Assembly (NCBI RefSeq): GCF_021028975.2
Contig: NC_059437.1
Coordinates: forward strand, 53,072,001-53,136,000
From: Sphaerodactylus townsendi
Taxonomy: Eukaryota
DNA: 64,000 nt
Direction: 5' to 3'
The position numbers and the translations under genes were made by a program. The notes below the pieces were generated by a model that saw only the letters and a program-made list of their open reading frames with translations, was not told the origin of the DNA and did not search any database. Shown here piece after piece: positions 27,701 through 64,000 of the stretch (positions are counted from its first letter, which is position 1; the number at the start of each line of letters is the position of its first letter).

Positions 27701-30700
27701 GTTAAAATCTCAATATTCAAGTGAGCAGGAACACCTGGGCACAGGCCTTTTACGACCCCAACACTTTCATTTGAATCGGGACCAAAAGCATCTAAGCCTG
27801 TTAGAGGGGGAAAGGGGAGAATGTTACTCTGAGAAACTGTTGGATCAGAAGTTAATATTATAGCTGATCCTCCTCTTTCTGGTGACACTGAAAATATGCT
27901 CCGGTATTCTGCTGTCTAAAGGTACAGGACATTCCTCTCTCCTTCCCTGAGGACTGGTCTGATATGCAAAAGGGAACCTTTTATTTGCAAATCTGGACCT
28001 TATATTTGTTCCAAAGACAGAAGCTGTTTTTATGCTGGCATTTATGAAGGCTGGACCAAAGTTCTCAAGTGTCCGTGCCTTCCGGCTGGCTCACAGGAGC
28101 TGAGGGAGCACAATGTTGAAGGCGGTGGAATTAACAGGATCTGTTCAGGGCGAAGGCAGGGAGTTCCAGTGTTGAACATTCCTTTATACTTTAAAAAAAG
28201 ACACCAACAAACTCCATGCGAATAGAAAATTAGCACAGCTGGGAGAAAGGGTGTGCCCTCTTATTTTGCTTTGAGGTACTGGCTTTCTATTTGCAGGGTG
28301 CTTTTAAAGTAGAGGAGGAATCTAAAAAGTGATCTTCTTCCACCTGCAATTACAAGTGCCCAAAAGTGATCTTCCACCTGCAATTAGAAGTGGTGCAGTC
28401 TGTTCGACCACTTTGAGCAGTTCCTGCCTCATGCCCTTCAGCATGAGTGAACCAGGCTCCCTTGGTTCGTAAGATCCTTGGTGGAGATAGGTTGGATGAC
28501 ATACTTTTTGTGAGGTTTTATCATATGAACATGCATTGCAGTCAGTATTGTCATGGCTAATGATGTGCAATAACATTTCACTTACATCTTTACTTCTAGG
28601 GTTACAGGGAAAGGAAATACTTTGTAGCCATTGTAAACACAGATTAATTGAGACAAGTTTTCCCAAAAATATTCTTATTATCTAAAATAACAAAGTTCTA
28701 CCCGGGAACAATCCTAAGCAGGACAACTTGGAAGTCCTGTTTTATTCACTGGGGTATACTTCCCAGAAATAATTCCTAGGACTGCATCCACGGTGAGCTT
28801 CTTTTGAACGTGACAGATGTTTATCCTTTGTTGCACTCCAGATGTTTTGCTTATTCTTAGTCCACCTTTTTCACTGAGACTCAAGATAGATTACAGAGCA
28901 AAAACAATGCAATCAGATAGAATAAGTGTTAGGATTTTATAAGTGCCTGCTTCATTCAGTCAAGCAAGAGTTAACGGTTGTAGTATGTAGTACTGAAGTC
29001 ACATGGCTAGAATCATATGAGTTTCTGGAAAGATCTCTCTCCTTCTTCCAGCAAAAACAGGAGAGGCAGACCTATAGGGACAGGCAGACTGCATAGACAC
29101 CCAGACTGAGCACTTGCATCGTATAGAGTTTACTGTCCTATATTTAGTGTAACTTAATTTTGTTATCTAGTAAAGTTCTACAAAACATCTTGCCCTATTA
29201 TTTACTCTAATAAACCAACAATAAGTCACCCAGTGGAACTGTGCTGAAACTTTCACGTATGTATTTCTGCACTCTTGATACTGTGGCTTTTACAAAGGAA
29301 ATCACAGCAGGATTCACTTCAGATCTTGCAACTGATGCTAGAAAATGCTGCTACTCACGTATGATTTCCACCCAGTCATCTGGGATGCTGGAATTGGAAT
29401 TGCCTCTTTTCCCAACCAGGCTCGCTCGCACTAAAGAATTCAGTTTGTTAGCGACATTCTCCCTGCAAAATGTGAGTGCATTATAATTGGACTTTTACAA
29501 ATGCAGTGAAGAAAATAATTTGTCTTGTCTACTTTGGCCCTAAGTAAAATGCAGAAGGTGAGGAAGGAGTTGTTTGCCAACTATTAATTAAGGAGGCAGA
29601 TTTCTTATCAGCAATGCTGGGGGCCAGAGCACCAACCTCTCTTCAAATATGCCACAAGCTAGGAAACCAAAGTTACCACAGCTCACCTTAACTGACTGCA
29701 GTTCTCCTGAAGATCAACTTCTAAAATGCATCCTGAAACCGCATCATATCCGAACAAAATGGGAGTGAAGCTTGCCGACATGCAAAGACTCTGTCCACCT
29801 TTATAAAGACATGTGCTTAAGAAATCTTTGGGTCAACTGGTTTACTTCTAGCTTGCAATTTTACACACAACATTTAATTACAATACTGCAGTGAACAATA
29901 ATGTTAGCTGAATATGACTTTGCTATTATAATGAGAGGTGTTTAATTCAGCTTTTGCTGTTCCACTTAAGAAGAGAAGAAGAAGAAGAGTTTGGATTTAT
30001 ATCCCCCCTTTCTCTCCTGCAGGAGACTCAAAGGGGCTGACAATCTCCTTCCCTTCCCCCCTCACAACAAACACCCTGTGAGGTAGGTGGGGCTGAGAGA
30101 GCTCCGAGAAGCTGTGACTAGCCCAAGGTCACCCAGCTGGCGTGTGTGGGAGTGTACAGGCTAATCTGAATTCCCCAGATAAGCCTCCACAGCTCAGGCA
30201 GCAGAGCTGGGAATCAAACCCGGTTCCTCCAGATTAGATACATGAGCTCTTAAACTCCTACGCCACTGCTGCTCCTGACCGAGCAGTCATAATGCAGTGT
30301 TACAGAGATCTAAAACAATGCTCTCATGTTAGGAAAGTTTTGAACATTCACCTTTTTTCTTCCGGATCCACTGAAGAAAGAATATATATCTATATTTTAA
30401 CTCTGCTTTATAAGTTCATTTTTAATTGTTTTAATGATGTGTATTTGTATCTGGGTAGCACTTGTAAAGGCAGAAAGGCAGGAGACAAATTTTGTAAGTA
30501 TAAAAATAAATAATTGCCTGACAAGGATGCTGATTAGCCCTGTATTCTTCATGTTACATGGATAAAAATTAATATTCCATTCATCAGCACATTTTAAAGT
30601 AACACTTAAAACCTATTTTGCTGCCAGCCACATTGCACCACCTTACCTTGACAATGCATAAGACAAAAGTTACTGTGGCACTCAAGCAAGCTTATTCTGA

Positions 30701-33700
30701 AACATACTTGACTTACATGGCAGTATTCCAATATCCGATATAAAAAATGTCATACCAGACTTCCAGAGATTCAAAGTGGTAACTGAAGAATTCAGGATTA
30801 AAGCTCTGATTGGTTTTCCAACTTGATAACCTGATTAAAAGACAAGAATATTATGTGGGATGGTGTGGATGTTCGATCCATTCCGACCAGCAGTGCTGCC
30901 ATACAGCTATATTGGGGTTCCCACACAGACACACCAGGGGTGTTCTGAATTCCAGTTAAAACTAAAGGGGGTGGTTCACACATTAACACACGAATACGAT
31001 TCAGGAATGTATGTATTTTTAATTCTTGTTTTATGGTTATTTATAGTATTATTGTATTTTATGGACTGTTGGAAGCAGCCCTCAGCCCAAAAGGGGAAGG
31101 GCAGCCTTATAGGAAATGAAATACAGGAAACAAAATACAGCAGGGAACAACTTGAAAAACAGGAGAAGCAACACATGATATTACAAAAAATCAAAAAGGG
31201 ACATGGCTGACCATCAACACGACATTTTGTTCTATATGCAAGAAATTTCACCTGGATTCCCAGAGAATTCTTCTGGGCTGGTCGCATTCATGCTCACAAA
31301 GTTTACAGTGAACCTCTGTCTCAGGGTGTCTGGTGAAAAAAAAAAGACACTGTCTATGTTTAATAAAAGGAAGGGCACTGTTTTCTGTTGCCTTTGTGAA
31401 CCAGCTACCATTGCGCAGTCAGTTGCCAACACCTGTCTAACAGCACACTTTGCAGCACTGGTACATTGTTGAACTCCCACTGATCGAATGATTCGATTGA
31501 TAATTTCAAAGCAGAATTGTGTTGGCTTTTTTTGTGGCTTGGTAAATGGCATAGTGGACACAGGATGAACAGTGCAAAGAGGTGGTTCAAATAGCTACAT
31601 TCAATCTAGGGACTGTGCTACAAACAGAACCGTGGGCTAGGATCCAAATAAGGTTTTAGGCACCTCCCAGTTTTGCTACCACAGGTCTTTGGTCAAAGCT
31701 TCTTTAGACCCCCAGCCCAAACATCTCATGAAAACCAAATCAACTGTTGCGACTGGTTCCACATGACCCTCTTGGGGGGCTACCGTAATAGAAATACAAG
31801 TGATAACCTCTGGGTCCTCACCATGTTCTTTAACACCCTATGGAATGCTCCATTTTCAATCACACTGTTCCAATAAAATGAATTTGCTAGAAAAGGAACT
31901 CCCAAAGGCACCTGGTGGGCCACTGCGAGTAGCAGAGAGCTGGACTAGATGGACTCTGGTCTGATCCAGCTGGCTTGTTCTTATGTTCTTATGTTCTTAA
32001 CTGTGTCTAACCAATGCGTAAAACATACAAAGCTACCTTCTGGGCAGACCTGTCCAAAAAGGATGGAGACGTTCACTTCTATTATTCTCCTGCCTTCCCA
32101 TATGATCGTGTAATCTTCTGCAAATGTCACATTTTTGCATTCTGAAAACAAGGAACAGTCCATATGGAATCTACAGTTTCACGCATCTGTGTATACATAT
32201 ATTGTAACATTAACCACATATTTACCACTGCCAGAACAGCTTCCATTTGTTATTTTCCTCTCGTAGGTAACGTGTGACATAATGGGATCTGATGAGAACA
32301 AAAATTGTGAATGTAAAACAAGTATTTTTTTAAAAGGCTTGCACTGAGACAACACAAATGTGCCTCATTCCAACATGGGGGGTCCCACTTATAAAAGCAA
32401 GAATCTTCTGCATAGGGGACTACGTGCAAAAATCTGTGCAGCTGCAAGTTCCAGTACAGTTTTACTTCCAGTACCAAATCAGGTGAAGAAGAATGGGGAA
32501 GATGCAAGCCCCGTTATAGCCCTCAGGAAGTCACTGACGCTCTCAGTGCTGACTGAATAGTTGACAAGTATCAGCCTTCAAGCTCTTAGCCTAAGTCAAA
32601 CCTAAATCTAGCATAATTCTCAAATCCACAAATGCAGCCAGGCCTTTTCTTATCCTGTATGGTTCCGCCCTGAGATTCAACTAAAGAACAGAGTAGGGCC
32701 ACTCCACTTTCTCCCATATCTGACGAAAACAGCTTGGACTTTCAAAAATTCACACTCCCCAAATCTTGCTGGTCTCTAAGCAAATCACTACATCTGATGG
32801 TAGTGAGTTCCACACAAGCTGTGTCCATTTTTTGCTTATGTAAGTGCCTAAGACATTTGGTGTGGTGGCAGTGCCGCATACATAAACAACAATGGCAGGT
32901 GCCTGACATCAAGAGTGTGTGCCCCAAAAGCGAAAGTGTAGGTATCTGCAAAATCACAGAACCCCTTCGAACAGTCCAAGCTCCAGATGAACAAGCCACA
33001 CAGTAGTTTTGCCCATCCAAAGCTACATACCTCCGGTGCCGCTGTTTATGACCATACTGGGAGGCAAGCGGCTACCCTCCTGGCAAGCGACCAGGCACTC
33101 GACGGCAAAATCCTGAAGGTACGCGACAGGAGCATCGGTTGCACATTGTCCAGCGAGGAACGGCTGCAATTGGATTCATTCTTTGAATTTATTTTCATTT
33201 CTTCTCCCCATCATAGAAATTCAAAGCAAACCCCCAAAGGAGCAGAGGGGTTGTTCAGAAGAGCAAAGAGGCTCTTCTTACCTGAGGAACTGCAAAATAT
33301 TCATTTTCCACTGTCATGATTGGATCCCCTTGCTTGTAGCCAGTAGCAAATCTCCCTGGGATGGTTTGAAATGGAATCTTAAATGAAGACACTTCGGAGG
33401 ATGTCCTGCAAACACATTTTCAAAACGCACTAGTGAAGGACACAAAGAGTTACTTGAGACAGATCCAGAAGCAGCAGAGCACGTGACACTGTCAACGAGG
33501 GGGGGGGGGCGACTCAATGGGGAAGACACTGCTGTTCTCATTCCCCCTCCTCCTTATCCAAACCCCTTCCCCACTTTTTAAAAAAATAAAAGCGATTTGG
33601 ATATATCCTCCACCACCAAACAGATGGGAAATACACAGCCCCTGGTAAAAAAATTTAAATGAGAGATGGAACCCCAGTAGATCATTTGGGAGCATCTGAT

Positions 33701-36700
33701 AGTGCAGAACTGCTAAAGCTTTGATATGATCGTAAACCTAAGAGGAATGAGGAAGGACACACACTCCACATTTGGAGAGGGAAGAAGGAATCACACTGCG
33801 GCTGAACAATTGACATCAAAGTAGGAACTGGGCTGTGCATGCACATTACCCCCATTCTGCAGTCATTCTGATAGTTACCAGGTTCGATTCACTGGCTATC
33901 ACATACAAAGCCTTCTTATCCACAAACACCTCCCCCATGCTCTACCACGACAGCTTCACTCATCTGAGTCAGCCCTTCTGCAGGAGCACCCCACAAATGG
34001 GCGAGATTATGAGATTACCCCCTCATGAGGCCCCTGCAATATTTTGTCGTCCCTGACAGTGCCCTATACTGGTTTCATTCTTAGGCGCTGCCAGCCCCTC
34101 CCGGCCTTAAGACCAGGTGCTACCAACATGGCTTTTAGACTGCCGTCAGTTGATTTGTTATGCTGCATACTGGATTTTAAATGTTTTTAGATGTATTTTA
34201 AGTAATTTATTGGACATGATATTGTATTGTGAACCTCCTAGAGCCCTTAGGGCAGTGGTGGCGAACCTTTGGCACTCCAGGTGTTATGGACTACAATTCC
34301 CATCAGCCCCTGCCAGCATGACCAATTGGCCATGCTGGCAGGGGCTGATGGGAATTATAGTCCGTAACATCTGGAGTGCCAAAGGTTCGCCCCCACGGCC
34401 TTAGGGGATAAGNNNNNNNNNNNNNNNNNNNNNNNNNNNNNNNNNNNNNNNNNNNNNNNNNNNNNNNNNNNNNNNNNNNNNNNNNNNNNNNNNNNNNNNN
34501 NNNNNNNNNNNNNNNNNNNNNNNNNNNNNNNNNNNNNNNNNNATTCTTATCCATTCCCTGTAGTGACCCCCACCCTATGAAATGTACTCCCTGAGGAGAT
34601 CAGGAAGGCTCCTGCAGGTCTGTCATTCTGCAAATGATGTAAGACAGAACTGTTCAAGAAAGCAATATTATAAAGGAACAGGGCTGCATTATAGCAGAAT
34701 GATTCAGGAAAGTATCTGAAAAGAGAGCGGCACTGTGGACTAATCTGTAATCTGTTTTTATCTACTCATTGCACCCTATTATCTACTCATTGCACCATAT
34801 TATCTACTCATTGCACCATATTTCTGTTCAGTCCATTTCCTGCATCAACGTGTCATGCTTAATACTTGTGCCTTGATTCAGATTCCTGAAATCCTAGATG
34901 TCTTTTCCTTCTAACTGTACCAACTTACATTAAGTAATCCTCTTTGATGTATTGTCGAAGGCTTTCACGGCCGGAATCACTTGGGTGCTGTGTGGTTTCC
35001 GGGCTGTATGGCCGTGTTCTAGCAGCATTCTCTCCTGACGTTTCGCCTGCATCTGTGGCTGGCATGATCCTCTGAAGATGCCAGCCACAGATGCAGGCGA
35101 AACGTCAGGAGAGAATGCTGCTAGAACACGGCCATACAGCCCGGAAACCACACAGCACCCAAATCCTCTTTGAGTCTCGGTGAGAAAGGATAAATGAATT
35201 AATATATAAAACATGTTTTTAAAATAATATTGCGGAAATTAAAGTTTGGTTAGGGACCAGTTCATGGACACATTTGTCCCAGACAAGCTTCCATACTTAC
35301 ATAGAACCATGATAAAAATAACCAAGAAAAGGTGTATTGTTCAGCGATGATTGCACACATAAGAAGGGAAACCAGTCAGGGGTGTTGATCCCAGTCTGGG
35401 CAGAGCACAGCTGGTCAAAAGGTGGATTGACATCCCCACCAAACACTCCAGTAAAACACGATCCACCAAACAATTTCTTCATCTCTGGGGTACATTCCTT
35501 GAAACGAAAAAAAACACGCGCAAAGGACTTACACACAACAAAACTGAGTAGAGCCTGTTGCTGATCTCAACAGAATGAGAAGCATCAGGAACGAAGCTGA
35601 CAGCTGCTTCTTGATGAAGGCAAAATGGGGCAGGCAGAATGACATTTGGCAGATGGCACTCCCTGCCTCATCATTAATAGTGTTATATATTTCTACATAT
35701 CAGTTTATTAGGTCACAATACTAACAGTTTAAGCTATTCGTGTATATAAAGGCTACGGTAGAAAAGACAGTTTTCTAATAAATTATTCCATTAACATTTC
35801 AGCAGACTTTCCTGAAGGATACTCATTTTTTTTTAAAAAAAAGATTGTGTAACAAAGCAAGCTTTAAGTTCTAAGTGTAGAATTCATACCTGGTCACAGC
35901 AGCAACGGATATCACAGGCGCCAGCGGTCAGATTACAAGGACAAGGGCCCAAGGGCTGAAACACTTGATTGGGAATTACTGTTGCATTATCTGTTTTGCA
36001 CAGAAAAGACGAACTCAGGGACTGAGATTCACTAACTCTACAGACGATCCAGTTAATCTATGAAGCAACATGGAAATAGGGGAGAGGACTATGGGATAAG
36101 TAACTCATGGGGGTAAGTGACACACAGCAAGGCAGAAGCAGGAGGAAAAGAGACAATGGGGCCTAGACTTGTGTCTCATTGCATGTCCATGTCCTTTCCA
36201 ATATCCTGATGAAGAACATCAGGTCTGACAACCCCACTTCCACAGAGTCCCCAGGCACACAGCCGTTGTGTCAAAAAAGCTCAAATAAAGCCAATGAGAT
36301 TCAAATACCAAAAGTTTCTGTTTTTCCAGTCCCATTCCCCAAGGATGCGTTGGCATAGATCTCAGCTTGGATCAACAGACGAGCCGCCACCATGGACTCC
36401 TGGCAAGCAGAAACCTGCAGAGCGACAACCAAGCAGGGTGCCTCTGTGCAACAGTCAGTGCGGTTAGGCGTGCAGAGCTGTAGATGCCGGGTCAAGTGCA
36501 CGGTCACTCTGGAGATATTCTGAAACAAGACCGTTGGATGGCTGGTTAGACATTTCCTAAGCCTGACATAGCGTGTTGGTCTCTTCCAACTCTACGATTG
36601 CTACCTGCCGAGCCTCAGATGGTGGGGGCACCTGAAGATAACTGTAGTAGTTTGGTAGGCTCATGTGAAGACAAGGCAAACAACCCAAAACTGTAACGCT

Positions 36701-39390
36701 AAGCTAAAAATTGTTTATATTTTATCCAAAGATAAACAGAACAGCAGTTACAAAAGCAACCATGTGCCGATAATATACATTACCACAGTAAACAGGAATG
36801 TGTCCCTTTAAAGTCAAAGCAAAGATCATAGGAAAATGACATAATGCTTCAAGGTGGTCATCATTGGTAAATCCCACAGCTCAGAAATGTCTGAGAAGAG
36901 TGATGGAGTCCTGAACTAGTTTGGGTCAAATAGGATACTTAAGAAGTACATGCAGCATACTTAACTTGCTGAGAGATCCCAGCATTTTACTAACCCCTTG
37001 AGACGTGACATTCAAACTCCAGTCTCCAGTCCTGTTTCTTCCACTACAGTCCTGAAGAGGCAACATTCCTAATAAAAATCAAAAGATGAATGCTTTTACA
37101 TCCATTATTTTATCTCAAGTCTTCACCCAGGTAGTAACTAGAAGATATTACCATCAGGAAAGGCTTGCATCTTTCCCACTGGGTAACCCCCTAGCATTGC
37201 TTCCCCTTAACATTTGAGTCAAGTGGGCCTGTGGAAATCCTGAAGTCAAGTGGGCCTGTGGAAATACAGCAAGATGAATGAGGGCCACTAAACTGAAGCT
37301 TAATCCAGACAAGACCTGGGTGTTGCTGGTTAATGATAAAGCTGCTTGAGGAGTAAGTCAGCCTGTTCTGGAGGGGGCTGCACTTTCCCGAAGGTGCATG
37401 GGGCCATCAATTCCACCCCTTGTCATACAGGAATACATAAACAAACCACTCCTAACCAATGGCTATCCAGCCTCTGTTTACAAACCACCAAAGAAGGCGA
37501 CTCCACCACCCTCTGACAGTGGGTGTATTCCACTGTCAAACAGCCCTTACCATCAGGAAGTTCTTCCTAATGTTTGGGTGGAATATCTTTTCCTGCACTT
37601 TGAATCCATTACTCCTTGTAGCAGCAGAATCCATTACTCTCTGTAGCAGCAGAAAACAAACTCAATTCATCTTCAACATGACATCCCTTCAAATATCGAA
37701 ACACAGTCCAAGGCCACCTGGCAGGTTTCCACAGCATAGTGGGGATTCAAACCTGGATTTCCCAGATCCTAATCTGATACTTGAACCACTACACCACTCT
37801 GGATCTCATCCACATCTTTCTACCCAGAGTTTAAGGAGCTGATTTATAATACCTTTTTTTGCAGCTGTTTGTAGCTTGTTTTTATTGTATATGGTTTTTG
37901 TACTGGAATGAGGCTTTCTAAATGCTGTATTTTAATTGATATATCCTACTGTTTTATTATTTTTATTTAGTACATTGCCTCAGACTCCTGAAGAGGCAAC
38001 GTAAAATATTCTAAATAAGTATGTAAGTGATCTCTGAGGGGGAAAAAAAGCAACATTTCCACCCCTGTTTAATAGCATGAAATCTGGGGAAAAAATGGTT
38101 TCAAAACAATCTTACCTGTTTCATTGTCTGCTACTGAAAGAGAAAAAATATTTGCAGAGCTGCCAACCAAAGAGGCAGTGACCATGGACCCCGACATGTA
38201 GATAAAGGAAGGCTGAAAACCTAAAAAGATCAAATGGATATTAGGTTTCAAACATACACCACTATAAGAAGCATATTTTGATCCTGTAATTTTTCATTTC
38301 AGCTAGAAATGGAGCCTACTCTGACTGGCAGCAATTCTCCAGTTTCTTTTCTGCTTTCACTGATGTTCTGGTTTAGGGAAATAATTGAGCAGATGAGGTA
38401 TTTCTTTTATTTTCTGTTCTGCATGACAGCTCAGGAGCCATGAACGAGGCAGAGTGCCTAATTCTGCCAGCCCACAAAGCCAAACATGCAGCAGCTACCC
38501 TAGAAGCAGGCTGATGATACCGTGTTTCCCCAAAAATAAGACAGTGTCTTATATTAATTTTTGCTCCCAAAGATGCGCTATGTCTTATTTTCAGGGGATG
38601 TCTTATTTTTCTGTGTTCTGTTCATCAGGCATGCTTCCAAACAAAAACTTTGCTATGTCTTACTTTCGGGGGATGCCTTATATTTCGCACTTCAGCAAAA
38701 CCTCTACTACGTCTTATTTTCAGGGGATGTCTTATATTCAGGGAAACAGGGTAGAAGGTGCAAGAGCAGCAGCACCTTCCCCCATGACCAAAAAGAATGA
38801 AAATTTCTGGAACAGCATATTAGATTTTAATCATAAGCACCATCGCTCCTTAACAGACTACATTCTGTCCCAAAATACCTCAAGTCATGTCATACTTATT
38901 TCTCTAAGGCAACTAAGCTAACCAAAAAGAAGGGTCCCTTCACTGAACTATTTATTTGGCCATGAGTACTGTGGATTCAAAACAAGTAGCACTCCTGGTT
39001 CGAGCAAGCATAGCATTGTCGCCTGTCCCCTCCCTGGCAGGGTTCTTGTGCCCAGTTCCCCACGTGGAGATGCAACATCGGGAGAAACTACACCTGCTGG
39101 ATTTCTGCCTGCCCCGTGGGTGTTAAAGGCATGAATTATTCTAGATGTCTGTACACGAAGCGGAGGCCGCTACCAGTTTCTCCCAGGGATACAGGCAGAA
39201 ATAAACAGGCCAGGCTTTTCCAGGCACGGAGATGTAGCGCAGGAGTACCTGCGCCTGTTGGATTTCTGCCTGTCCCACTGTTATGAAAGGCAAGAAAGGG
39301 GCGATTCCTCTGTCACCCACCGGGATTCCCATTCTGAGCCCGAGCGCCGGAGAGCACCAGCAGCCCCCAAAGGAGGTTCCTGAAGACCAT
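24744..39390 (-). CDS. TCTN2: Tectonic-2, ciliary transition-zone protein; complete, 18 coding exons, 679 aa
   Basis: Exons (minus strand): 39321-39390 (signal peptide [18 protein letters not shown]), 38116-38220, 36995-37068, 36309-36519, 35890-35990, 35301-35497, 33282-33405, 33031-33163, 32226-32288, 32037-32141, 31252-31329, 30756-30830, 29687-29798, 29359-29462, 27641-27797, 26713-26838, 25635-25723, 24744-24859. Total 2040 nt, in frame. Tectonic motifs [39 protein letters not shown] and SGNPGYQVGKP are present, plus a C-terminal TM helix. AATAAA on the minus strand at 24603-24608. Confidence 0.95.
25269..25449. mobile_element. SPIN (Space Invader)-type hAT MITE
   Basis: CAGTGGTTCTCAACCTTCCTAATGCTGCGACCCTTTAATACAGTTCCTCATGTTGTGGTGACCCC...AGGTTGAGAACCACTG matches the recalled SPIN/URR1 MITE ends; exact 8-bp TSD GTCTACTG. 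Confidence 0.85.
29969..30275 (-). mobile_element. tRNA-derived CORE-type SINE (Squam3-like); near-identical copies at 43836-44132, 51121-51433 and 52354-52563
   Basis: Pol III A/B boxes on the minus strand (TGGCGTAGGAG.., GGTTTGATTCC), a CORE-like TGGGTGACCTTGGGCTAGTCAC segment, and a (TTC)n tail. Confidence 0.75.
34253..34398. mobile_element. Palindromic hAT MITE
   Basis: TIR CAGTGGTGGCGAACCT; 8-bp TSD CCTTAGGG; same internal core as 21811-21958. Confidence 0.8.
34413..34542. other. Assembly gap (130 N)
   Basis: Run of N. Confidence 0.99.
34948..35161. mobile_element. Palindromic Penelope-like-element-derived insertion
   Basis: 85-bp perfect inverted repeat (34981-35065 / 35078-35162). 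12-bp TSD AATCCTCTTTGA at 34936-34947 and 35162-35173. The sequence resembles squamate Penelope terminal repeats. Confidence 0.75.
35068..35110 (+). ncRNA. Minimal type I hammerhead ribozyme motif (Penelope-like-element associated)
   Basis: TCCT-CTGAAGA-T-GCC(13 nt)GGC-GAAA-C-GTC-AGGA: stem I TCCT/AGGA, core CUGANGA, stem II GCC/GGC, GAAA, palindromic ACGU stem III, GUC cleavage triplet. Confidence 0.7.
38520..38751. mobile_element. Tc1/mariner-superfamily (pogo/Tc2-like) MITE
   Basis: ~24-bp imperfect TIRs CCGTGTTTCCCCAAAAATAAGACA, TA on both flanks, internal repeats of TGTCTTATTTTCAGGGGA. Confidence 0.7.
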
Positions 39391-39480
39391 AGCAGGGCAG
39401 AGCGGTCGCTAAAAGGCGCTGTAGGCCGGGAATGGGCCCGTGAGAGGCACAGCCGCCGCCATCCTGACAACAGGCTCTCA

Positions 39481-39494
39481 GTTGCTATGGAAAC
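39481..39494. promoter_or_regulatory. RFX X-box in the TCTN2 promoter / CpG-rich region
   Basis: GTTGCTATGGAAAC is a near-consensus X-box (GTTGCCATGGCAAC-type), about 90 bp upstream of the TCTN2 ATG. A GC box (~39690) and CCAAT boxes (39721-39725, 39796-39800) are nearby. Confidence 0.8.
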
Positions 39495-41272
39495 GACGGT
39501 GGCGGGTAAGGCCCAAATAAGGTTTCCCGTCCCGAAAGCAAAAGGATAAGCTTCAAAAATAAGCCGGCGGGCTTTGCTTCATTGCTAACCACATTTAAGG
39601 TTGGGTGTTGATGTTTTATAACAAAAAAAATTGTTATAAAAGTTGACACAACAGCCCCCACCCCCGCTGCTTTAGTGGTAAACGCCATAGGGCGGGCCCG
39701 AGAGGAGTTCGCTTGCTCTAATTGGTCAACATGAAGCAAAACCTTTTTTGATAGGTTCGCAGCTGTGTTTGTCGTTGGTGAGTGGTTTCTAATAACCAAT
39801 CACAACCCAGAAACACCTAAGGCCACCCCGCCTCAATATGCTACCGACTTCACACGTGCGGGAGAAGCAGCTGGTAGAACCGGCTGCTTCCTTCGCCAAT
39901 TTATGGCAACCTTCTGAATTAATAACCCCCTATGGAGGACATTGATTCATAGGGTCGCCATGAGTGGGAAGCGACTTGGCACTTAAGACACACAACATAG
40001 GCCCCTTCCGCACATGCAAAATAATGCGTTTTCAAACCACTTTCACAACTGTTTGCAAGTGGATTTTGCCATTCCACACAGCTTCAAAGAGCACTGAAAG
40101 CAGTTTGAAAGTGCATTATTCTGCATGTGCGGAATGAGCCACAGAGACACAAAGTCCTATGGTTAACACCTCTCTTGCAGCCTAAGGGCTGTGATTCGAC
40201 CCATTATCCCTTTTTCCTGCTGCATTACATTTTTTCCTAGCATTATTTTCTTTTTCAGTGACTCCTCTTCTCATAAAGTGACCTCAATGTGACCATGTGT
40301 GTCTTCGCATACTGTGACTATAATGTGGGCTGGCTGACTGCTGCAGCTGGCGAACTCACAGCATGTTTATCAACCCAGACAAGCATGGGGGGCGGGGGGG
40401 TGGCTCATCAAGCCAGATTGGGAAAGTTGGCCCAGCTGGCTCATGGGCCTGATAAGCCCTCTCAAGAGACCAGATCTGGACCTTGGGTTGTGTGTTTGAC
40501 ACCCCTGCCCTAAAGAATTCACTTTAACATTCCTCGCTTCTCATGGATATGCGATGGTTGCTGTTTAACCCCAACAGATGGCATTATTACCCCCTGCAGA
40601 CCAAGCCACACTATGGAGGCTGAACATGAATGATTCATCAGGGTTACAGACCTTATCAAATGAATAACTAGAGTAAATGGGTTTGTGCATACAACTTAGT
40701 TAAATATATATCTCGGAAATGCACATTTTCCTTCCCAGTTGCTATTCTTCAGGCATGAGTTCAGCCCACCTTGCAGCTGTTATATCTGTGGATAGCAGGA
40801 TATTGGCCAGGAATCAGAAAAAGCAGAAAATTCAATCCTATTTGATTAGCTTCTTAACAGAGTAATGGAAGCCATACAGAAACAAAAAAGGAATTCACAA
40901 GTACAAAAAAAACTCTGAATTGTTTTCTATGCATCTCATCCGTCATGGGCCAGGAATCTGTGTTTTGTTTGGAGATATTATGGGTCACTTGCTTGACCTT
41001 CCTTCTGAGGAGATCAAGTCAATGCTTAGCTGAGCGCACCAGCAGAAAGAGATTGAGCAAAACTCCATCTGTCCCTTTGCAAGAGAGGTCTCTTTTGCTC
41101 ATCTGCCAAGCAATTACATCGAGTCCATTCAGAGCTTTCAAAGGACAGAAATCAGCAGTGTTTCCGCCCATCCCTGGAACAGGAATGTGCTGGCACCACT
41201 CAGTCTTCTGAAGTTTTATGTCGCTTTCGTAGACGCACAAAGGAAAAACCACAGACAAACAGAGGGGCGATC

Positions 41273-44200
41273 ATGGATGTTGATCCAAGAGTAGGTCTGT
41301 CATTTCTATACAAGAATGACCCTTTCTACTCGCTCTGCCTTTCCGACTTGATGACAGCACCACAAAGGATTCAGAATAAGTTTCTCAAGGAGCAGAAGAA
41401 CCTCATAACGGTAAGTTGTCTGGCAGAACAACCCACAGCAGAGGCACAGGTGACTCTGACAAAGCCCAGTGCTAAACGCCATCAACAGTAACAGAAGATA
41501 ACCAAGCAAATTATTCATCCTATCTGGCTGATTGATTGGGCTTTCAGAACTTTGCTTCTAACCATTTGTCTAGGGTTACCAATGGTGACAGCAACAGGCT
41601 GGTTGACCAAACACATAATTGAGGATGTTCAAGGAATTGTCTGAACTATTTAGGACTCCTTCAACATTACAGAAGGGTGCATTGAGGAAATCAACAGAAA
41701 TGGTGGTGTCATCTTTGCAGATGAAATGACAACTGCAAATGCACTGCTTGATTCTTTTACGAATGTGGATCTCAGGTTTTCTATGAATGCACATCTCATC
41801 TTTTGCTATGAATGTAAATCTCAGCTTTTTCTGATCTGCTTGTTGGAATGCTTACAGGCAGNNNNNNNNNNNNNNNNNNNNNNNNNNNNNNNNNNNNNNN
41901 NNNNNNNNNNNNNNNNNNNNNNNNNNNNNNNNNNNNNNNNNNNNNNNNNNNNNNNNNNNNNNNNNNNNNNNNNNNNNNNNNNNNNNNNNNNNNNNNNNNN
42001 NNNNNNNNNNNNNNNNNNNNNNNNNNNNNNNNNNNNNNNNNNNNNNNNNTTTTGTAACTTATAACAGTTCCCAGGAAGTTCACCCTCGACTGTCAGGCAC
42101 CTCCTCTCATGTAGTACTAAAATGTATAAGGTTTACTTTGTTCTCCCAATAGATATTAGCAAAGAAGTATAATAGACTCCAGGTGGGATGTCTTAAAAAA
42201 TAACGACTAGTTTTAAAGTGTCTACCCTGTCAGACAGGTGCTCTGGTTTCCATCCAACTCAACGGTACTTTAGGCCCCGCTATAAAGAGCTCAAAGAAAG
42301 CCCTGTTAATGTAACAAATATTGTTGCAAAGCTGATGCTGGAGATATAAGAAAAAAGGGGTGCGAAGATTCACACTGAGTAACTGACAAGGGGTGTGGTG
42401 TGATCTTTGCAGATGAAATCACAAAACAACCTAATTATCAACCAGCACACAAATTGTATGACTTTGTCCTGAAAGAGATGTTTGATGCTTTGTCCTGAAA
42501 GAGATGTTTGATACAGTGCAACAACTTGGGCAGAGTTGCCAAAAGAACAAGCATCTAAGACTCATATTCTAAGAAACATACAAATCATTAGCAAAGGATT
42601 TCAACAGTACATGTACAGAAAATTCACAGTTAGTAAGGGGGAGGGAGATCAGTTGAGTCTACATGATCCTCTTATTAAATATTCTCATTAAAATATTCAG
42701 CATATTCCAGAAAAAGACAGTAATTTAAGCAAGAAGCTGTTAAATTACCGTATATGTCTACAAACAAATATACTTTAAAAACATTTTTATGATATTATGG
42801 CATAGTATCTTTGCACCACAAAACTTTAAAAAAGCATCGTAAGTAGGTATTCTCTGTTTCTGCAGACAATGAAGAAACTGGAGCACCAGAAGCTGACGCG
42901 GCTAAGGCAACTCAATGAAGAGAAAAGGCAATTTAGCCTCCTGATGAAAAAGAGGCTCAGCCGCACAGTGTCTGTCAGAAGAGGGTCATCCTCAGCTACA
43001 GAAAGAGGCTCCCAAAGAACTTACATCAGCGTCAAATTTTCTCCTCTCGCTTCCAGTAAAAGCAGTTTGAACAGTGCAGATGCTAAGCCCGATTCCAAAG
43101 CAGTGTCTAACTCACCTTCCGCTGGCACCCAAGACCTTCCTGCAAGCAGGACTTCGAAGTTTTGCAAAGTAAGTGCAATGCCTCACACACGATGGAGCTT
43201 TAATGCTTTTAGCATTTCAGAAAAATGCAAGGGCCCCTTCTCAAAAGCTTCTGTGTCCCAAAAAAGGGAGAACCTGATGTAAACTTGAAGTCATCATGTC
43301 CTTTTAAGCATTGAGCAGGGGGTTGTGCTAGATGGCAGGTATGGCCCCTTCCAACTCTATGATCTTAACTCCTAGGCATTTGCGGGGGAGAACAACTGCA
43401 AAATCAGGCAGTGACATTTAAACATAGGTAGGTGTGTATGTCCCAAAGCCATGACCACGGCAGGGAAAGAGGGCACTCTGCCCCACGCAGAACACTGATT
43501 GGCTTCAGGAGTCCCCAAAGCATTTTGAATCTATGGGTACCTGTGGAATTCTGACACAAGATGGTGGCACAATCACAAAATGGCTGCCACAGGAGGCAGA
43601 ATCACTCACTCACTCACACACACACACAAAGACAGGACTGTCCAACTCTGGCCCTCCAGATGTTCATGAACTACAATTCCCATCAGTCCCTGCCAGCACG
43701 GTCAATTAGTTATGCTGGCAGGGGCTGATGGGAATAAATATGAACATCTGAAGGGCCAGAGTTGGATACCCCTTCACTAAGAGAAGGTCTAAGTGCCAGG
43801 AGGAACAGCAGCAATTAAAAACAATAAACTGGGAAAGAAGAAGAAGAGAAGAGTTTGGATTTATATCCCCCCTTTCTTTCCTGGAGGAGACTCAAAGGGG
43901 CTTACAATCTCCTTCCCTTCCCCCCTCACAACAAACACCCTGTGAGGTGGGTGGGGCTGAGAGAGCTCTGAGAAGCTGTGACTAGCCCAAGGTCACCCAG
44001 CTGGCGTGTGTGGGAGTGTACAGGCTAATCTGAATTCCCCAGATAAGCCTCCACAGCTCAGGCGGCAGAGCTGGGAATCAAACCCGGTTCCTCCAGACAT
44101 GAGCTCTTAACCTCCTACACCACTGCTGCTCCAGAGGAGTAAGACAGAATAAAACCAACACTGGGATGGCAGATGGTGCTATAACGACATTATTTCAATC

Positions 44201-44796
44201 TGCACGGCCAATCAGAGTGTCAGTGGCCAATCAGAAGGTCCTGCTGGGCAAGATCTCACCCACTTTGTGACAATATTTAATGTGCGCCTGGTAAATTGTT
44301 AGCAGGCACCACTTTGGGGACTCCTGGGTTTCTTTATGGAACTTATTTTTAAGGAATGAAATCATTAGTGGGTTGTGGGTTTTCCGAGTTTTACTTTACA
44401 ATGAAACCATTGTACATAAAAGGCTCTGGACTTCAAGTATTCTTAATGGAACATGCTAATAATTAGTGGACACTAAAATAAATATAGACGTGCTTGGTCT
44501 TAGCAAGTAGGCTCTAGAAATTCTTCTGAGTTTTTGCAAAAACACAGTTTTTTCCCCATCTGAACCCCAGCTAGGCACAAGAAGAGGTGTGATCTCTGAG
44601 GCCTAACCCACCAGGGCAAACTGTTTCCCTGAGCCTAGCCCCTGTTATGTTTTCTAAACCACAGATATCAGACCTTTCTTTCCCAAGCGCTGGACCAGCC
44701 AACATATCCACGTATCTACACAGCAAGCAGCAGCTGACCAGAAGGAAAAACAACTTGCCCTTTCTCAGTCAGACTGGCTCACCAAACTTCCCTTAG
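41273..44796 (+). CDS. Uncharacterised coiled-coil protein, predicted spliced gene of about 184-190 aa
   Basis: Acceptor at 41231-41232; Kozak ATCATGG at 41273; exon ends at 41410 with donor ACG|GTAAGT. The phase-0 acceptor tctctgtttctgcag|ACA at 42866 continues the frame (...QRIQNKFLKEQKNLIT|TMKKLEHQKLTRLRQLNEEKRQF...). It then either reads to TAA at 43280-43282 (184 aa), or uses donor AAA|GTAAGT at 43168 to a phase-0 exon 44665-44796 (190 aa). Confidence 0.68.
41862..42049. other. Assembly gap (188 N)
   Basis: Run of N. Confidence 0.99.
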
Positions 44797-47134
44797 AGGA
44801 GCCGTCAATCAAGGGTATTAAAGGCTTAACATCTGAATGTAACTGCATGTGTTTGGCTCTGATTGGTAGTCTCTGTGTGAGGGTGTTATTCTAGGTATAT
44901 AATGCTATTAATTGTCTACCGGTCAAATGGCAAGGGATATTAAAAGAACTGTGCAATCTCTCCATTGTTACCTCTTCTAGGAATGGACAATACCATCTTC
45001 CTAATGTTCCCACTAGGCCAAAATACAACAAACAAGACATCAAGTCTTCTTAGCTAAAAGTGCCTAGTGGTGCCCCTGGCCTCCAGCAAAAATCACTCAT
45101 AAAATCATTGGACACAAGAGAGGGCTTTTTTTTTCTCCTTTTCAAACTCACCCACCAGTTTTCTTAGGAACAATTTATTAAGGATAAGTTACAAAGTGGC
45201 ATTGACAACAAAATGGGATTCAGCTAGAAAACAGTAAAGGATTTGGTAGAGTACAAAGGAATGACAGAAAACCGATTTGAGAACTGTGTTACCAACAGGA
45301 TTTATGCTCCTTTCTGATAAAATAAAAATGGCTAAGCTCTAAATAGCTCTAGTGTTGAAATATCTGAAGCTGTTGCTATGTTTTTGCTCTGTGTACTGCA
45401 AGTAGAGCAATAATGATCTTTTTATTGTATTTGAAATTCTTGGCACTGGTTTTATGCCTAATGAAGGTTTTTGGATTTGGATTTGGACAGAAAACTTGCG
45501 GCCTCATGTGAATAATATACAGACCCGAGGGAGCAACGATTCCATGGGACCGCCAAACAGAACACAGATGGTTGGGTTCAGAGTCAGGAAGAAAACTGCA
45601 CTGAGACTGTCTCCAAAGGGAGAAAGAACACGTGTTTTCGCACAGTTGGAGGCAAATCAGTGTCTGAAGAACTAAATCACACGTTTGTTTTTGGAGACAC
45701 ACACAACATACTAACATATATATGTCTATATTCTGCACACCAGGCCAATCCCTCCTCGTGATTAGTGAGAGATGAGATGAAATTTGCCATACACTATTAA
45801 AAATCTTGTTTGTGCAAGTCAGGGGAAGACTGAGCTCTTTCCAGCTTTCAAATTGACATCTTAAAAACTGATGTACCCCAAGCCTGTCTGCCTTTTCCAG
45901 AACCAGCTAGAAAACAGAGAAATCTTTCATTGCAGCCAGGAAGACTTGTGGAAGGCTTTTGATAACCCAGATCATGATTATTATTAGGGTGCTTTACACC
46001 ATATCGGATTCTGATGGACAGCCAGGAGAAATCTCAGGCTAGTGAACTAGGATGAGGTCCGTTTGATGGCTTGGGCCAGCCAAAGATCTGGATGCCTGGA
46101 CTATCTGTGTGGAGAGTCTAAACCAAACCCAAACTAAACACAGTTATTGCTATTAGAAGCAAAACGGAAATATCACATTGTTAGCTACACTGGATGAACT
46201 CAGCTGTGGGCAGTTCACAACCCCAATCTTCCGCAGTTTTGAAAACCGGGCAGTTCTTTTTACTAATTCAAATAGAAGCTCACCAGGGCTAGCCCAAGAG
46301 CCTGAACTGAAGCCCCTGAAAAATATTAAGAGTTCTGCTTAAATAAATGGGGGCGAATGAAGGGGCCGAGGCTTCAACTGTTTAAATGGAGACAGTCCAA
46401 GGAGTGCCAGAAAAGATCCTTGGCTTCAGGCATGTTGTCTTCACATCTCAACTAGCTGCAGATTTGGTGTTATGGGGTGGATCCTGCGAGTGTTCAGCTA
46501 GCAAAAAGGGACCTTTCTCCACCTTCTTTAGCCCCCTGAAAAAAATTCTGCTGAGGATCAGGGGACCCTCCCAGGCCAAAGACCACTCAGGTCCAGGGGC
46601 TTCAAAAAGGATGAGAGTCAGATGGGTTGGCCAGTCCTCCCATCAGAGGAATATCTGTAGGGTCAACCCTATGACCTTACAATTTGTGTTATAAAAAACT
46701 AGCACATGAGTTAAATCCCACTGATCTGATCCCCTAACAGCAGTGTCTTCCCCAGCTCAAGGAACCTTTTCTTGTCATAAAAGGTTGTTGCCACACAGAG
46801 ATGCTTTTTGTGCTGGGGGAGAGGCGGAGGCTAATTAATAGTACAGAAGTGTAAGAATCCAACCTCCTTGTGTGAAGGGAAGGCTCCTTGTGTGGGGGCA
46901 CAGGGGAAGGTGGAGCACCACCATTAATGGCATAGATCTGCAGGATCTAATCCGCTGGGCATAGGCAGGTGAAATATATCCAACTTACATGACTCTTCTG
47001 AAAGCTTTAGCTCTCTGTAGGCTTATTTTATTTCAGGACTTGCTCTTTTTCAGCATCCTACAAATGCCACTTGTAGATCCGTCGTCACAACCCTGCGCAG
47101 GGGCAAGAAGCCATTAATGGAAACGGTTAGGCCA

Positions 47135-58931
<11,797 letters not shown>

Positions 58932-62200: not shown

Positions 62201-63103
62201 CCCCCTGGTGGGTGCTGCAGTGATCCAGGGGGGCAGTGATAGCCACAGGTAGAAACATTAATACATATATCTTTCTGTTTAATTGCTACTAAAATTTTAA
62301 AAAAATTAATTTCCAGGGGGCGCTAAGTAATATTTTTTCTGGAAAGGGGGCGGTAGGCCAAATAAGTTTGGGAACCACTGCTGTAGTGGAAGCAGCCGTT
62401 TGAGCATCCAGGCAGGGAAGGGCTCCTTCAGTACCTCCTCTAGCAGAAAGAATCTGTGAGTTCCAGCTTCTTAGTGTGACATGTGACTACTGTTTTTCCC
62501 CTTTTGTCTTTCCCTCAATAGCTACATCATGGAGAAGGTTGACCTGGTAATTGTTGGAGCTGAAGGAGTCGTAGAAAATGGAGGCATCATTAACAAAGTA
62601 AAGTGTGATGCAGTATCTACTGAAATAGCTCTCTGCACATTTAATATTTAAATTTTACCGGTCCCGGAAAGTGCCATTTGTAAGAGCAGCCAGCTTTGCC
62701 GGCATCCACATCCGCCTTGAGTCTCCTTACAGGAGAGAAAGGTGGGGGATAAATCCAAACTCTTCTTCTTCTCAAGCTTTAAACCTCAGGCTGGAAGCTG
62801 GACCCAGGCCACAGGTAGTTCGGGGCTGGGGCACAGTCACAAGGAGGTGGGGTGACCCTGTAATATGCCCCCAAGGAAGTGGTGCCCAGGACTCCAGACC
62901 CCTGCATTTCCCCTGCTACACCACCAACTGCTAGGTTCATCGACCCAACGGTAAACGCCGGTTTTTCCCTTCTGCAGATCGGGACCAATCAAATGGCTGT
63001 GTGCGCCAAAGGTCAGAACAAGCCCTTCTACGTGGTTGCTGAAAGTTTCAAGTTCGTAAGACTTTTCCCTCTGAACCAACAAGATGTCCCTGACAAGTTT
63101 AAG
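59294..63103 (+). CDS. EIF2B1: Translation initiation factor eIF-2B subunit alpha, coding exons 1-8 (last exon lies right of the window)
   Basis: Exons: 59294-59306, 59853-59954, 60090-60226, 60727-60843, 61183-61295, 61776-61844, 62522-62597, 62978-63103. Contains [66 protein letters not shown] and [19 protein letters not shown]. Introns 2 and 5 are GC-AG. Confidence 0.97.
62174..62380. mobile_element. hAT MITE
   Basis: Ends CAGTGATTCCCAAA / TTTGGGAACCACTG; exact TSD CTGTAGTG. Confidence 0.8.
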
Positions 63104-63189
63104 GTGAGGAGGGGGGACAGGGACAGTTCTTTGAAATCAACACGCAGTAGCTTGAAGTTAAGTAGAAACATTAAAGCAATTTAATGGAT

Positions 63190-63382
63190 AATGTATTGTC
63201 GAAGGCTTTCACGGCCGGAATCACTTGGGTGCTGTGTGGCTTCCGGGCTGTATGGCCGTGTTCTAGCAGCATTCTCTCCTGACGTTTCGCCTGCACAGAT
63301 GCCAGCCACAGATGCAGGCGAAACGTCAGGAGAGAATGCTGCTAGAACACGGCCATACAGCCCGGAAACCACACAGCACCCA
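63190..63382. mobile_element. Palindromic Penelope-like-element-derived insertion (same family)
   Basis: Near-identical to 34948-35161, but the CTGAAGA core is deleted at the centre. Flanking direct repeat AATTTAATGGAT. Confidence 0.72.
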
Positions 63383-64000
63383 AATTTAATGGATGGTTTT
63401 TGTTTTAAGCCACAAGGTTCCAGCAGACTATAAGGGTATAGTTGAGGGAGGATCCCCCTCCATTATGAAACCCTGTGGCTGCTAGCACGTTTTCTTTTGA
63501 CCTTTCTTCTCCTTGGTGGCATTTTCTTGCCAAATGTCGAAAAGGAAGGGAAGCAAAACTTAAGTCCTATAGTCCTGTGGTGTGGCAGATGCTGTTCATG
63601 GCACCAGGTGGGCTGCCTGGAGCAGGGGGATGGTCTGGGCCTCCTTTTTCTTGCCAAGTTGTAGTCTCCTGTAGCTGTCCGCATTTTGAAGCAGTAACTG
63701 TTCATTGCTCCATCACTGGGAAAAGAGTCGAATGGAGCAAGCCATTGAGGAGCAGCCTGGAGCACTGAAGGAAGACTGCAGAGACCTGGGTTCAAATCCA
63801 CACTGCATACTCTCTCCACCTAACCTACCACACAAGGTTGGTGTGCAGATGAAATGAGGAAAGGGAGAACCATCTGTTCTGTCCTGAACTGCTTGAAAGT
63901 GGAGGAGGGTGAAAATGAGAGAGAGGCTGCACATCTCGTCGATGCCTGTTTTCAGTGCAGAAAATCTGATGTCCTAAAAAATATACATACTAAACTTAAA

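What the first reader, a model, noticed from the sequence alone, without database searches (positions are those of the whole stretch)
41233..44796. Unrecognised spliced coiled-coil gene between TCTN2 and GTF2H3
Seen: the two separate track ORFs (41273 and 42869) join into one frame through strong splice sites. Acceptor gttttatgtcgctttcgtag at 41232; strong Kozak ATCATGG at 41273; donor ACG|GTAAGT at 41410; acceptor tctctgtttctgcag| at 42866; both phase 0. The junction falls inside one continuous charged helix (QRIQNKFLKEQKNLIT|TMKKLEHQKLTRLRQLNEEKRQFSLLMKKR), followed by a Ser-rich, probably disordered tail with basic kinase motifs (KRLS, RRGS). A second perfect donor, AAA|GTAAGT at 43168, can join a phase-0 exon at 44665-44796 (ISDLSFPSAG...PNFP*). 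The product is 184 or 190 aa. Knowledge: I know of no protein-coding gene between GTF2H3 and TCTN2 in human. Inference: this is a lineage-restricted or mammal-lost gene. Its helix spacing loosely recalls CCDC190-type N-terminal coiled coils, and its head-to-head position with a transition-zone gene suggests a cilia or sperm-flagellum protein.
Basis: partly seen in the sequence, partly recalled or inferred. Interest (0 to 1): 0.88.

Follow-up and report, generated by a model that had tools for sequence, protein, structure and literature searches.

The report
Real small conserved gene, function unknown

Summary
The three + strand coding exons (41273-41410, 42866-43168, 44665-44796) have the stated splice sites and phases. 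One transcript-like contig of a public run joins them at exactly those junctions. The assembly gap (41862-42049) lies inside intron 1 and does not touch the reading frame.

The window is Sphaerodactylus townsendi.

About 40 orthologs exist, all unnamed "uncharacterized LOC" proteins. They occur in squamates, frogs, salamanders, lungfish, bichirs, sturgeons, gar, early-branching teleosts and a horn shark. None came from a mammal, bird, turtle or crocodilian.

The position of intron 1 is conserved. dN/dS against another gecko is 0.02-0.09 in the N-terminal part. The tail-to-tail position with GTF2H3 is shared with the shark.

The protein has a confidently predicted N-terminal helical region of about 80 residues and a disordered, Ser-rich basic tail. 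Pfam, PDB and fold searches gave no match.

The CCDC190 likeness and the cilia or sperm role have no support. Function is unknown. My guess is a small helical adaptor with a regulated tail.

The parts
41233..41272 (+). 5' untranslated part of the first coding exon, behind the AG acceptor at 41231-41232. It stays open in the frame of the ATG.
   Evidence: The X4 transcript contig piece starts at 41232/41233, and 1325 nt of that contig lie further 5' and are unplaced. The sequence was read.
41273..41410 (+). Coding exon 1, 46 codons (MDVDPRVGLSFLYKNDPFYSLC...NLIT). The start is ATCATGG and the donor is ACG|GTAAGT.
   Evidence: It is 51% identical to the horn shark ortholog. dN/dS against Paroedura is 0.09. 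The intron position after codon 46 is shared with Paroedura, Elgaria, Xenopus and gar.
41411..42865 (+). Intron 1 (GT..AG). It holds the assembly gap at 41862-42049.
   Evidence: The X4 contig skips it, and X4 depth is zero over 41422-42730.
42866..43168 (+). Coding exon 2, 101 codons. The first ~31 codons continue the conserved helix, and the rest is a Ser-rich basic tail.
   Evidence: dN/dS is 0.018 for the helix part and 0.46 for the tail.
43169..44664 (+). Intron 2 (GT..AG), with a palindromic repeat at 43642-43765 and a high-copy SINE-like repeat at about 43850-44230.
   Evidence: The X4 contig skips it. The Paroedura and Gekko database models use the read-through form.
44665..44796 (+). 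Coding exon 3, 43 codons plus the TAG stop.
   Evidence: It is present in the species' own database protein P0001. It is 41% identical over 27 residues to Elgaria. In the family alignment it aligns with the last exon of the python, amphibian and fish proteins. The exon count and sizes resemble gar at 46/114/43 codons.
44797..45299 (+). 3' untranslated region as far as the contig reaches. It breaks at a repeat. AATAAA lies at 45321, and the GTF2H3 3' end on the minus strand is within about 100-150 nt.
45109..45270 (.). Conserved non-coding stretch inside this 3' region.
   Evidence: It is 75% identical to Paroedura and 73% to Elgaria. There was no Rfam match.

Best explanation
This is an expressed protein-coding gene of Sphaerodactylus townsendi with three coding exons and at least one further 5' exon. 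It encodes a 190-aa protein.

It belongs to an unnamed, single-copy gene family of jawed vertebrates that has no Pfam model and no literature I could find.

Shown:
- The splicing.
- The orthology, the conserved intron position and the vertical inheritance.
- Strong purifying selection on the first ~78 residues.
- A confidently predicted helical N-terminal region. In the python ortholog it has two short helices and one helix of about 47 residues.
- A low-confidence, Ser-rich, basic tail.

Inferred, with about 0.25 confidence: the protein is a small adaptor or regulator.
- The conserved polar and hydrophobic face of the long helix (Q41, L62-N63-E64-E65, Q68-F69, M73, L77) would bind a specific partner.
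- The disordered tail carries short, positionally conserved motifs that would be regulated by phosphorylation. One is R-x-x-[FY]-S about 25 residues after the helix. Another is F-S-x-L-x-S-x-K-S-S.

The stated confidence is for the gene-level claims, not for the function.
For: - Splicing: one transcript-like contig carries both junctions.
- Identity: there is a 100% match to UniRef A0ACB8FYZ8 of S. townsendi.
- Family: 41 proteins match at E from 1e-74 to 1e-18. They come from squamates, amphibians, lungfish, bichirs, sturgeons, gar and teleosts, plus the horn shark.
- Inheritance: the tree largely follows the species tree, apart from the long-branch shark and the sturgeon/paddlefish rows, with one copy per genome apart from the two X. 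laevis homeologs.
- Intron 1 lies after codon 46 in phase 0 in gecko, Elgaria, Xenopus and gar.
- dN/dS against Paroedura is 0.09 for exon 1, 0.018 for the helix part of exon 2, 0.46 for the tail and 0.19 overall.
- Synteny: TCTN2(-)|gene(+)|GTF2H3(-) is seen in Paroedura and Elgaria. In the horn shark the gene(+) is followed by Tfb4/GTF2H3(-). In Xenopus the gene lies next to EIF2B1.
- Structure: helices 7-17, 19-30 and 33-79 have pLDDT 88-98 and the rest is about 50. The window species' own protein gives the same long helix.
- Invariant columns come from the family alignment. The conserved R-x-x-[FY]-S segment is visible in the listing.
Against: - Nothing points to a function. There was no Pfam, PDB-sequence, Foldseek, VIA or Atlas match beyond generic long helices.
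- Basophilic [RK]xx[ST] motifs in the tail are not enriched over shuffled tails, at 2.33 against 2.36. RxxS is only slightly enriched, at 1.67 against 1.13.
- Run X4 is not on record as RNA. I infer that from its behaviour.
- 1325 nt of its contig lie upstream of 41233 and are unplaced. The frame is open from 41233, so the true 5' end, and with it the start codon in this species, is not proven.
- An exon 3 homolog was not found in Paroedura.
Confidence: 0.88

Rival explanations
1. The three exons are only the 3' end of a longer coding gene. The protein would start in an upstream exon and carry an N-terminal extension, so the 190-aa model is truncated.
For: - The X4 contig has 1325 nt 5' of the 41233 acceptor.
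- The frame of ATG 41273 is open back to 41233.
- Some database isoforms have N-terminal extensions: Sceloporus X2, Spea, Polypterus and the shark.
Against: - Most orthologs, from lungfish to geckos, start at the same Met, aligned with 41273.
- The extensions are not alike between species.
- The ATG has A at -3 and G at +4.
- TCTN2 starts at 39390 on the other strand. The extra contig length is therefore as easily an unstranded merge with TCTN2 mRNA, or a long 5' UTR.
Confidence: 0.1
2. This is the reader's reading: a cilia or sperm-flagellum coiled-coil protein of the CCDC190 type, co-regulated with the transition-zone gene TCTN2 from a shared promoter.
For: - The gene lies head-to-head with TCTN2. 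The start codons at 39390(-) and 41273(+) are about 1.9 kb apart, with a weak CpG-rich stretch at 39000-40000.
- The same layout is seen in two other squamates.
- Some ciliary microtubule proteins are among the generic long-helix fold matches, at Z 5.8.
Against: - There is no sequence similarity to CCDC190 or any named family.
- The fold matches are ties among hundreds of unrelated single helices.
- TCTN2 adjacency is not seen in Xenopus, gar or tarpon within 10 kb.
- The only S. townsendi RNA libraries described by the genome paper are whole male head and whole embryo, not testis.
Confidence: 0.07
3. This is a non-coding divergent or antisense transcript of the TCTN2 promoter, and its open frames are chance.
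For: - It lies near the TCTN2 promoter.
- The product is small and has no known domain.
Against: - dN/dS is 0.02-0.09 while dS is 0.9-1.1.
- Protein-level identity to a shark ortholog is 51-54% and collinear across the splice junction.
- The intron phase and the three-exon structure are conserved.
Confidence: 0.02

Closest known systems
UniRef100_A0ACB8FYZ8, 'Uncharacterized protein', Sphaerodactylus townsendi (P0001, 164 aa)
   Same: It is the same gene, with identical exon 2 and exon 3 and the same two junctions.
   Different: The database model starts at Met27 (MTAPQ...). It therefore lacks the 26 most N-terminal residues, including the family's best conserved motif LSFLYKNDPFYSLCLSDL, which orthologs show to be coding.
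Unnamed vertebrate family of 'uncharacterized protein LOC...' models. Examples: Paroedura picta LOC143822915 (XP_077164739), Elgaria LOC134410797, Sceloporus LOC121916494, Xenopus laevis LOC108705565 and LOC108716549, Protopterus LOC122799471, Lepisosteus LOC107079560, Salmo salar LOC106583623, Heterodontus francisci XP_067910614.
   Same: - Exon 2 is 74% identical to Paroedura.
- The N-terminal region is 51-54% identical to the shark.
- The intron position, the length of about 200 aa and the three-exon layout are shared.
- The genomic neighbourhood is shared with squamates, shark and Xenopus.
   Different: - Squamate proteins have lost the C-terminal Cys motif (C-x-C-G...L-L-x-R-S-x-S-C-x-P) that fish, lungfish and amphibian members keep.
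- Ray-finned fish copies lie next to a Serinc gene instead of GTF2H3 or EIF2B1.
CCDC190
   Same: Both are small proteins with an N-terminal charged helix and a long disordered tail. This is a general likeness only.
   Different: CCDC190 did not appear in a full HMMER scan of 1.84 billion proteins at E<=0.001, in the profile search or in the Pfam scans. I did not compare the two families profile against profile.
Generic single long alpha-helix or coiled-coil segments in solved structures
   Same: Residues 31-86 of the model superpose on many long helices at Z 5.5-5.8.
   Different: The matches are ties across unrelated proteins and lie below the level that means anything for helices. The two short N-terminal helices are not covered.

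Membership tests
Unnamed gnathostome family (LOC143822915 / LOC108705565 type) | N-terminal motif [LS]SFLYKNDP[FI]YSLC[LA]SDLMTA[PS]Q followed by the helix ...KEQ..L...L..LE.Q...R.RQLNEEK.QF..LM...L | tested here: met
   The exon 1 and exon 2 translations carry it. All invariant columns (Q41, E64, E65, F69, M73, L77) are present. The profile E-value for the species' own protein is 1e-52.
Unnamed gnathostome family (LOC143822915 / LOC108705565 type) | Phase-0 intron after codon 46 of the common start, and a three-coding-exon layout | tested here: met
   Window exon 1 ends at codon 46. Exact exon mapping gives the same position in Paroedura, Xenopus and gar, and after codon 48 in Elgaria, whose N-terminus is 2 residues longer.
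Unnamed gnathostome family (LOC143822915 / LOC108705565 type) | Orthologous position in the TCTN2-GTF2H3-EIF2B1 neighbourhood | tested here: met
   The same layout is found in Paroedura and Elgaria. In the horn shark the gene lies tail-to-tail with Tfb4/GTF2H3. In Xenopus it lies next to EIF2B1. This is not so in gar and tarpon.
CCDC190 | Detectable sequence or profile similarity to CCDC190 proteins | tested here: not met
   No such hit came from phmmer against 1.84 billion representatives, the profile search, or Pfam on the exon peptides and on 41 family members.
Ciliary / transition-zone module | Expression in ciliated cells or testis and localisation to cilia | not testable with these tools
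   There is only one RNA-like run of unknown tissue. The genome paper lists head and embryo libraries only.
Ciliary / transition-zone module | Conserved divergent pairing with TCTN2 | tested here: inconclusive
   It is present in three squamates (window). No gene is called within 10 kb upstream in Xenopus, gar or tarpon. No upstream gene is listed within 10 kb in the shark.

The most novel reading that the evidence does not exclude
The family is an ancient gene of jawed vertebrates, at least as old as the shark-bony vertebrate split. It would encode a so far undescribed helical domain and be truly lost in mammals, birds and probably other archelosaurs and most derived teleosts, while staying under strong constraint in sharks, early-branching ray-finned fishes, lungfish, amphibians and squamates. 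It would then be one of the uncharacterised genes kept only in 'cold-blooded' vertebrates, with a specific conserved partner still to be found.
Probability: 0.5. Interest if true: 0.55.

Novelty: already known. Interest (0 to 1): 0.4.

Why it matters
The finding corrects the public S. townsendi model by adding the 26 most conserved N-terminal residues.

It also pulls about 40 scattered "uncharacterized LOC" entries into one family with these shared properties:
- a strongly constrained N-terminal region of about 80 residues;
- a conserved intron position;
- an old position next to GTF2H3;
- a patchy distribution, with no mammal, bird, turtle or crocodilian member among predicted proteins.

That makes it a reasonable candidate for a first functional study in Xenopus, axolotl, gar or salmon. 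It does not bear on any long-standing question that I can name, and many such orphan vertebrate families exist.

Tried and rejected
- Pfam on the three exon peptides at E<=10 gave nothing. Pfam on 41 family members gave only scattered chance hits, none in more than 6 members.
- A PDB sequence profile search gave one hit at E 1.7.
- Foldseek against PDB gave nothing at E<=0.001. VIA wide search gave only tied long helices at Z<=5.8. The Atlas shape search gave TM<=0.37, and the Atlas feature search had no usable hit.
- A homodimer prediction of Paroedura residues 1-85 gave 'no answer' (score 0.01). It is no evidence either way.
- Three literature searches for 18 LOC identifiers of family members found no paper.
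- A second protein search with the N-terminal 80 residues of a 301-aa member, to reach longer proteins, found only known members.
- The test for enrichment of basophilic kinase motifs in the tail was negative.
- The search for an exon 3 homolog in Paroedura by blastn, tblastn and by eye found nothing.
- Rfam on 38000-48000 gave only sub-threshold hairpin hits that are repeat copies.
The exons were searched apart by reference, and database proteins (P0001, P0002, P0005) served as full-length stand-ins.
Full report
**What is in the sequence.**
- An AG acceptor ends at 41232, and ATG sits at 41273 in the context ATCATGG.
- The exon 1 donor is ACG|GTAAGT after 41410. The next acceptor ends at 42865.
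- The exon 2 donor is AAA|GTAAGT after 43168. The last acceptor ends at 44664, and the TAG stop ends at 44796.
- The three pieces translate to 46, 101 and 43 residues, all joined in phase 0.
- The frame of the ATG stays open back to the acceptor at 41233.

**The gap.** The N stretch at 41862-42049 lies inside intron 1 (41411-42865).
- The transcript contig described below joins exon 1 directly to exon 2.
- The shark ortholog is collinear across the junction, with residues 19-63 on exon 1 and 66-100 on exon 2.
- The reading frame therefore does not depend on the gap, and no constitutive exon is hidden in it.
- No genomic contig crossed the gap, so its length stays unknown. I did not try to fill it.

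**Expression and splicing.** Four runs of one study hold exon 2.
- Three of them (X1-X3) behave as genomic DNA, with contigs running straight through exon-intron borders, for example 42134-43591.
- The fourth, X4 (216 million letters), behaves as RNA. It has no depth over 41422-42730.
- X4 has one 2443-nt contig at depth 130.8 that lies on 41232-41409, 42865-43168 and 44665-45299 with nothing between.
The one-base shifts are the same G fitting either side.
- X4 is not on record as RNA, so that label is my inference.
- The genome paper of this species placed its RNA-seq in the same project as the DNA reads. It describes only male whole-head and 11-day embryo libraries (10.1101/2021.08.13.456260). 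Whether X4 is one of those I cannot tell.

**An open point at the 5' end.** 1325 nt of that contig lie 5' of 41233 and were not placed on 40300-41231.
- TCTN2 starts at 39390 on the minus strand, so only about 910 nt are free before 40300.
- The 5' part must therefore either overlap TCTN2 in antisense, or be an unstranded merge of overlapping first exons with TCTN2 mRNA.

**Identity and relatives.** A full HMMER scan with exon 2 found 22 proteins.
- The best is 100% identical: UniRef100_A0ACB8FYZ8, 'Uncharacterized protein', Sphaerodactylus townsendi, 164 aa.
- The window is therefore this gecko, and the gene is already in its public annotation.
- That model has the same exons 2 and 3 but begins at Met27.
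- A profile of 16 members then found 41 proteins. All are 'uncharacterized' or 'hypothetical', apart from two evidently mis-named or fused gene models (Varanus 'Succinate--CoA ligase', Polypterus 'PTN1 phosphatase'). No member carries a Pfam domain except the fused Polypterus model.
- They come from geckos, Sceloporus, Elgaria, Varanus, Podarcis, Lerista, a python, frogs, salamanders, lungfish, bichirs, sturgeon and paddlefish, gar, and teleosts (elopomorphs, Arapaima, clupeiforms, salmonids, Umbra).
- One further member found with exon 2 is from the horn shark Heterodontus francisci.
- No mammal, bird, turtle, crocodilian, zebrafish or percomorph protein appeared. This concerns predicted proteins only, because I had no vertebrate genome collection to search.
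- A maximum-likelihood tree largely follows the species tree with one copy per genome. The shark sits on a long, misplaced branch, and sturgeon and paddlefish join the lobe-finned side.

**Gene structure, selection and synteny.**
- Exact mapping of database proteins on their loci shows the first intron after codon 46, phase 0, in Paroedura, Xenopus and gar. In Elgaria it falls after codon 48, whose N-terminus is 2 residues longer.
- Where the exons could be mapped, there are three coding exons in tarpon (46/104/57 codons) and a 46-codon first and 43-codon last exon in gar. That implies about 46/114/43 for gar, against 46/101/43 here.
- Against Paroedura picta, dN/dS is 0.09 for exon 1. It is 0.018 for the first 31 codons of exon 2, 0.46 for the tail and 0.19 overall, with dS near 0.7-1.1.
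- Paroedura and Elgaria have the same layout as the window: TCTN2(-), gene(+), GTF2H3(-).
- The flanking genes in the window were confirmed by Pfam: DUF1619_N, Tfb4 and V_ATPase_I.
- In the horn shark the gene is again followed tail-to-tail by a Tfb4 gene 2.5 kb away.
- In Xenopus laevis it lies 2.6 kb upstream of EIF2B1.
- In gar and tarpon it lies upstream of a Serinc gene.
- The old, shared neighbour is thus GTF2H3 rather than TCTN2.

**Exon 3.**
- It is present in the transcript contig and in the species' own database protein.
- It is weakly but detectably similar to the Elgaria protein, at 41% over 27 residues.
- In the family alignment it aligns with the last exon of the python, amphibian and fish proteins. 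Those non-squamate proteins carry a Cys motif that squamates lack.
- I could not find it in Paroedura.
- Both forms may exist. The 190-aa form is the one seen here.

**The protein.**
- AlphaFold2 with the family alignment gives, for the python ortholog, helices 7-17, 19-30 and 33-79 at pLDDT 88-98. Residues 80-195 score about 50.
- For the gecko's own database protein it gives one helix across the splice junction, and the rest at 50-60.
- The invariant columns are polar as well as hydrophobic: Q41, E64, E65, F69, M73 and L77, with L62, N63 and Q68 nearly so. To me this speaks for a specific binding face rather than a plain coiled coil.
- The tail is 16% Ser and basic.
- [RK]xx[ST] motifs are no more frequent there than in shuffled tails.
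- One R-x-x-[FY]-S segment keeps its place from shark to gecko, and tetrapods share F-S-x-L-x-S-x-K-S-S.
- No search gave a named relative or fold.
- The dimer prediction gave no verdict.

**Verdict.**
- The claim of an unrecognised gene is only half right. It is predicted in public annotation, here with a truncated N-terminus, but it is unnamed, unstudied and without a family model.
- The gene is not lineage-restricted. It dates to the ancestor of jawed vertebrates.
- Its absence from mammalian and avian predicted proteins fits loss there, but this needs genome-level checks.
- The CCDC190 and cilia or sperm ideas have no support.
- My best mechanistic guess is a small helical adaptor with a regulated disordered tail. 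It is an inference with about one chance in four.

Noticed in passing
window 45109-45270: A non-coding stretch lies between the new gene's stop and the GTF2H3 3' end. It is 75% identical to Paroedura (L001 13202-13353) and 73% to Elgaria (L006 13718-13847), which is better kept than the surrounding DNA. It has no Rfam match. It may be a shared 3' UTR element of the two convergent genes.
   Followed up: partly
window 40300-41232 and upstream to about 38000: The X4 transcript contig has 1325 nt 5' of the 41233 acceptor that could not be placed. TCTN2 starts at 39390(-). The new gene's first exon therefore either overlaps TCTN2 in antisense, or the unstranded assembly merged the two mRNAs.
   Followed up: partly
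window 43642-43765 and 47275-47357: Two copies of a palindromic repeat are 83% alike. They give sub-threshold hits on both strands to several miRNA hairpin families (mir-5408 at 67.9 bits against a gathering score of 90). This looks like a MITE-like element rather than a miRNA gene.
   Followed up: partly
window about 43850-44230 and 45162-45535: These are very high-copy repeats, with summed contig depth up to about 3e7 in the genomic runs. They break both genomic and transcript contigs. The transcript contig ends at 45299 for this reason.
   Followed up: no
window 41273-41350 versus UniRef A0ACB8FYZ8: The public S. townsendi protein model starts at Met27 (41351). It leaves out the 26 N-terminal residues that are the best conserved part of the family.
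   Followed up: yes
L007 (Logan contig of SRR31946006), 298-762: This is an exon 2 homolog with a retained upstream intron, from an organism I could not identify. It is nearest to Elgaria (75% over 236 nt). It could be a further reptile lineage.
   Followed up: partly
L002 (gar) and L005 (tarpon): In ray-finned fishes the family member sits 1.3-3 kb upstream of a Serinc gene. A Polypterus database model fuses it with a PTPN1-like phosphatase. The gene therefore changed neighbourhood on the ray-finned side.
   Followed up: partly
window 1-24000, 24800-39390, 45400-57236, 59300-64000: The window layout, read from ORF translations and Pfam, is ATP6V0A2(-), TCTN2(-), the new gene(+), GTF2H3(-), EIF2B1(+). 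A second assembly gap lies at 34413-34542 inside TCTN2.
   Followed up: partly
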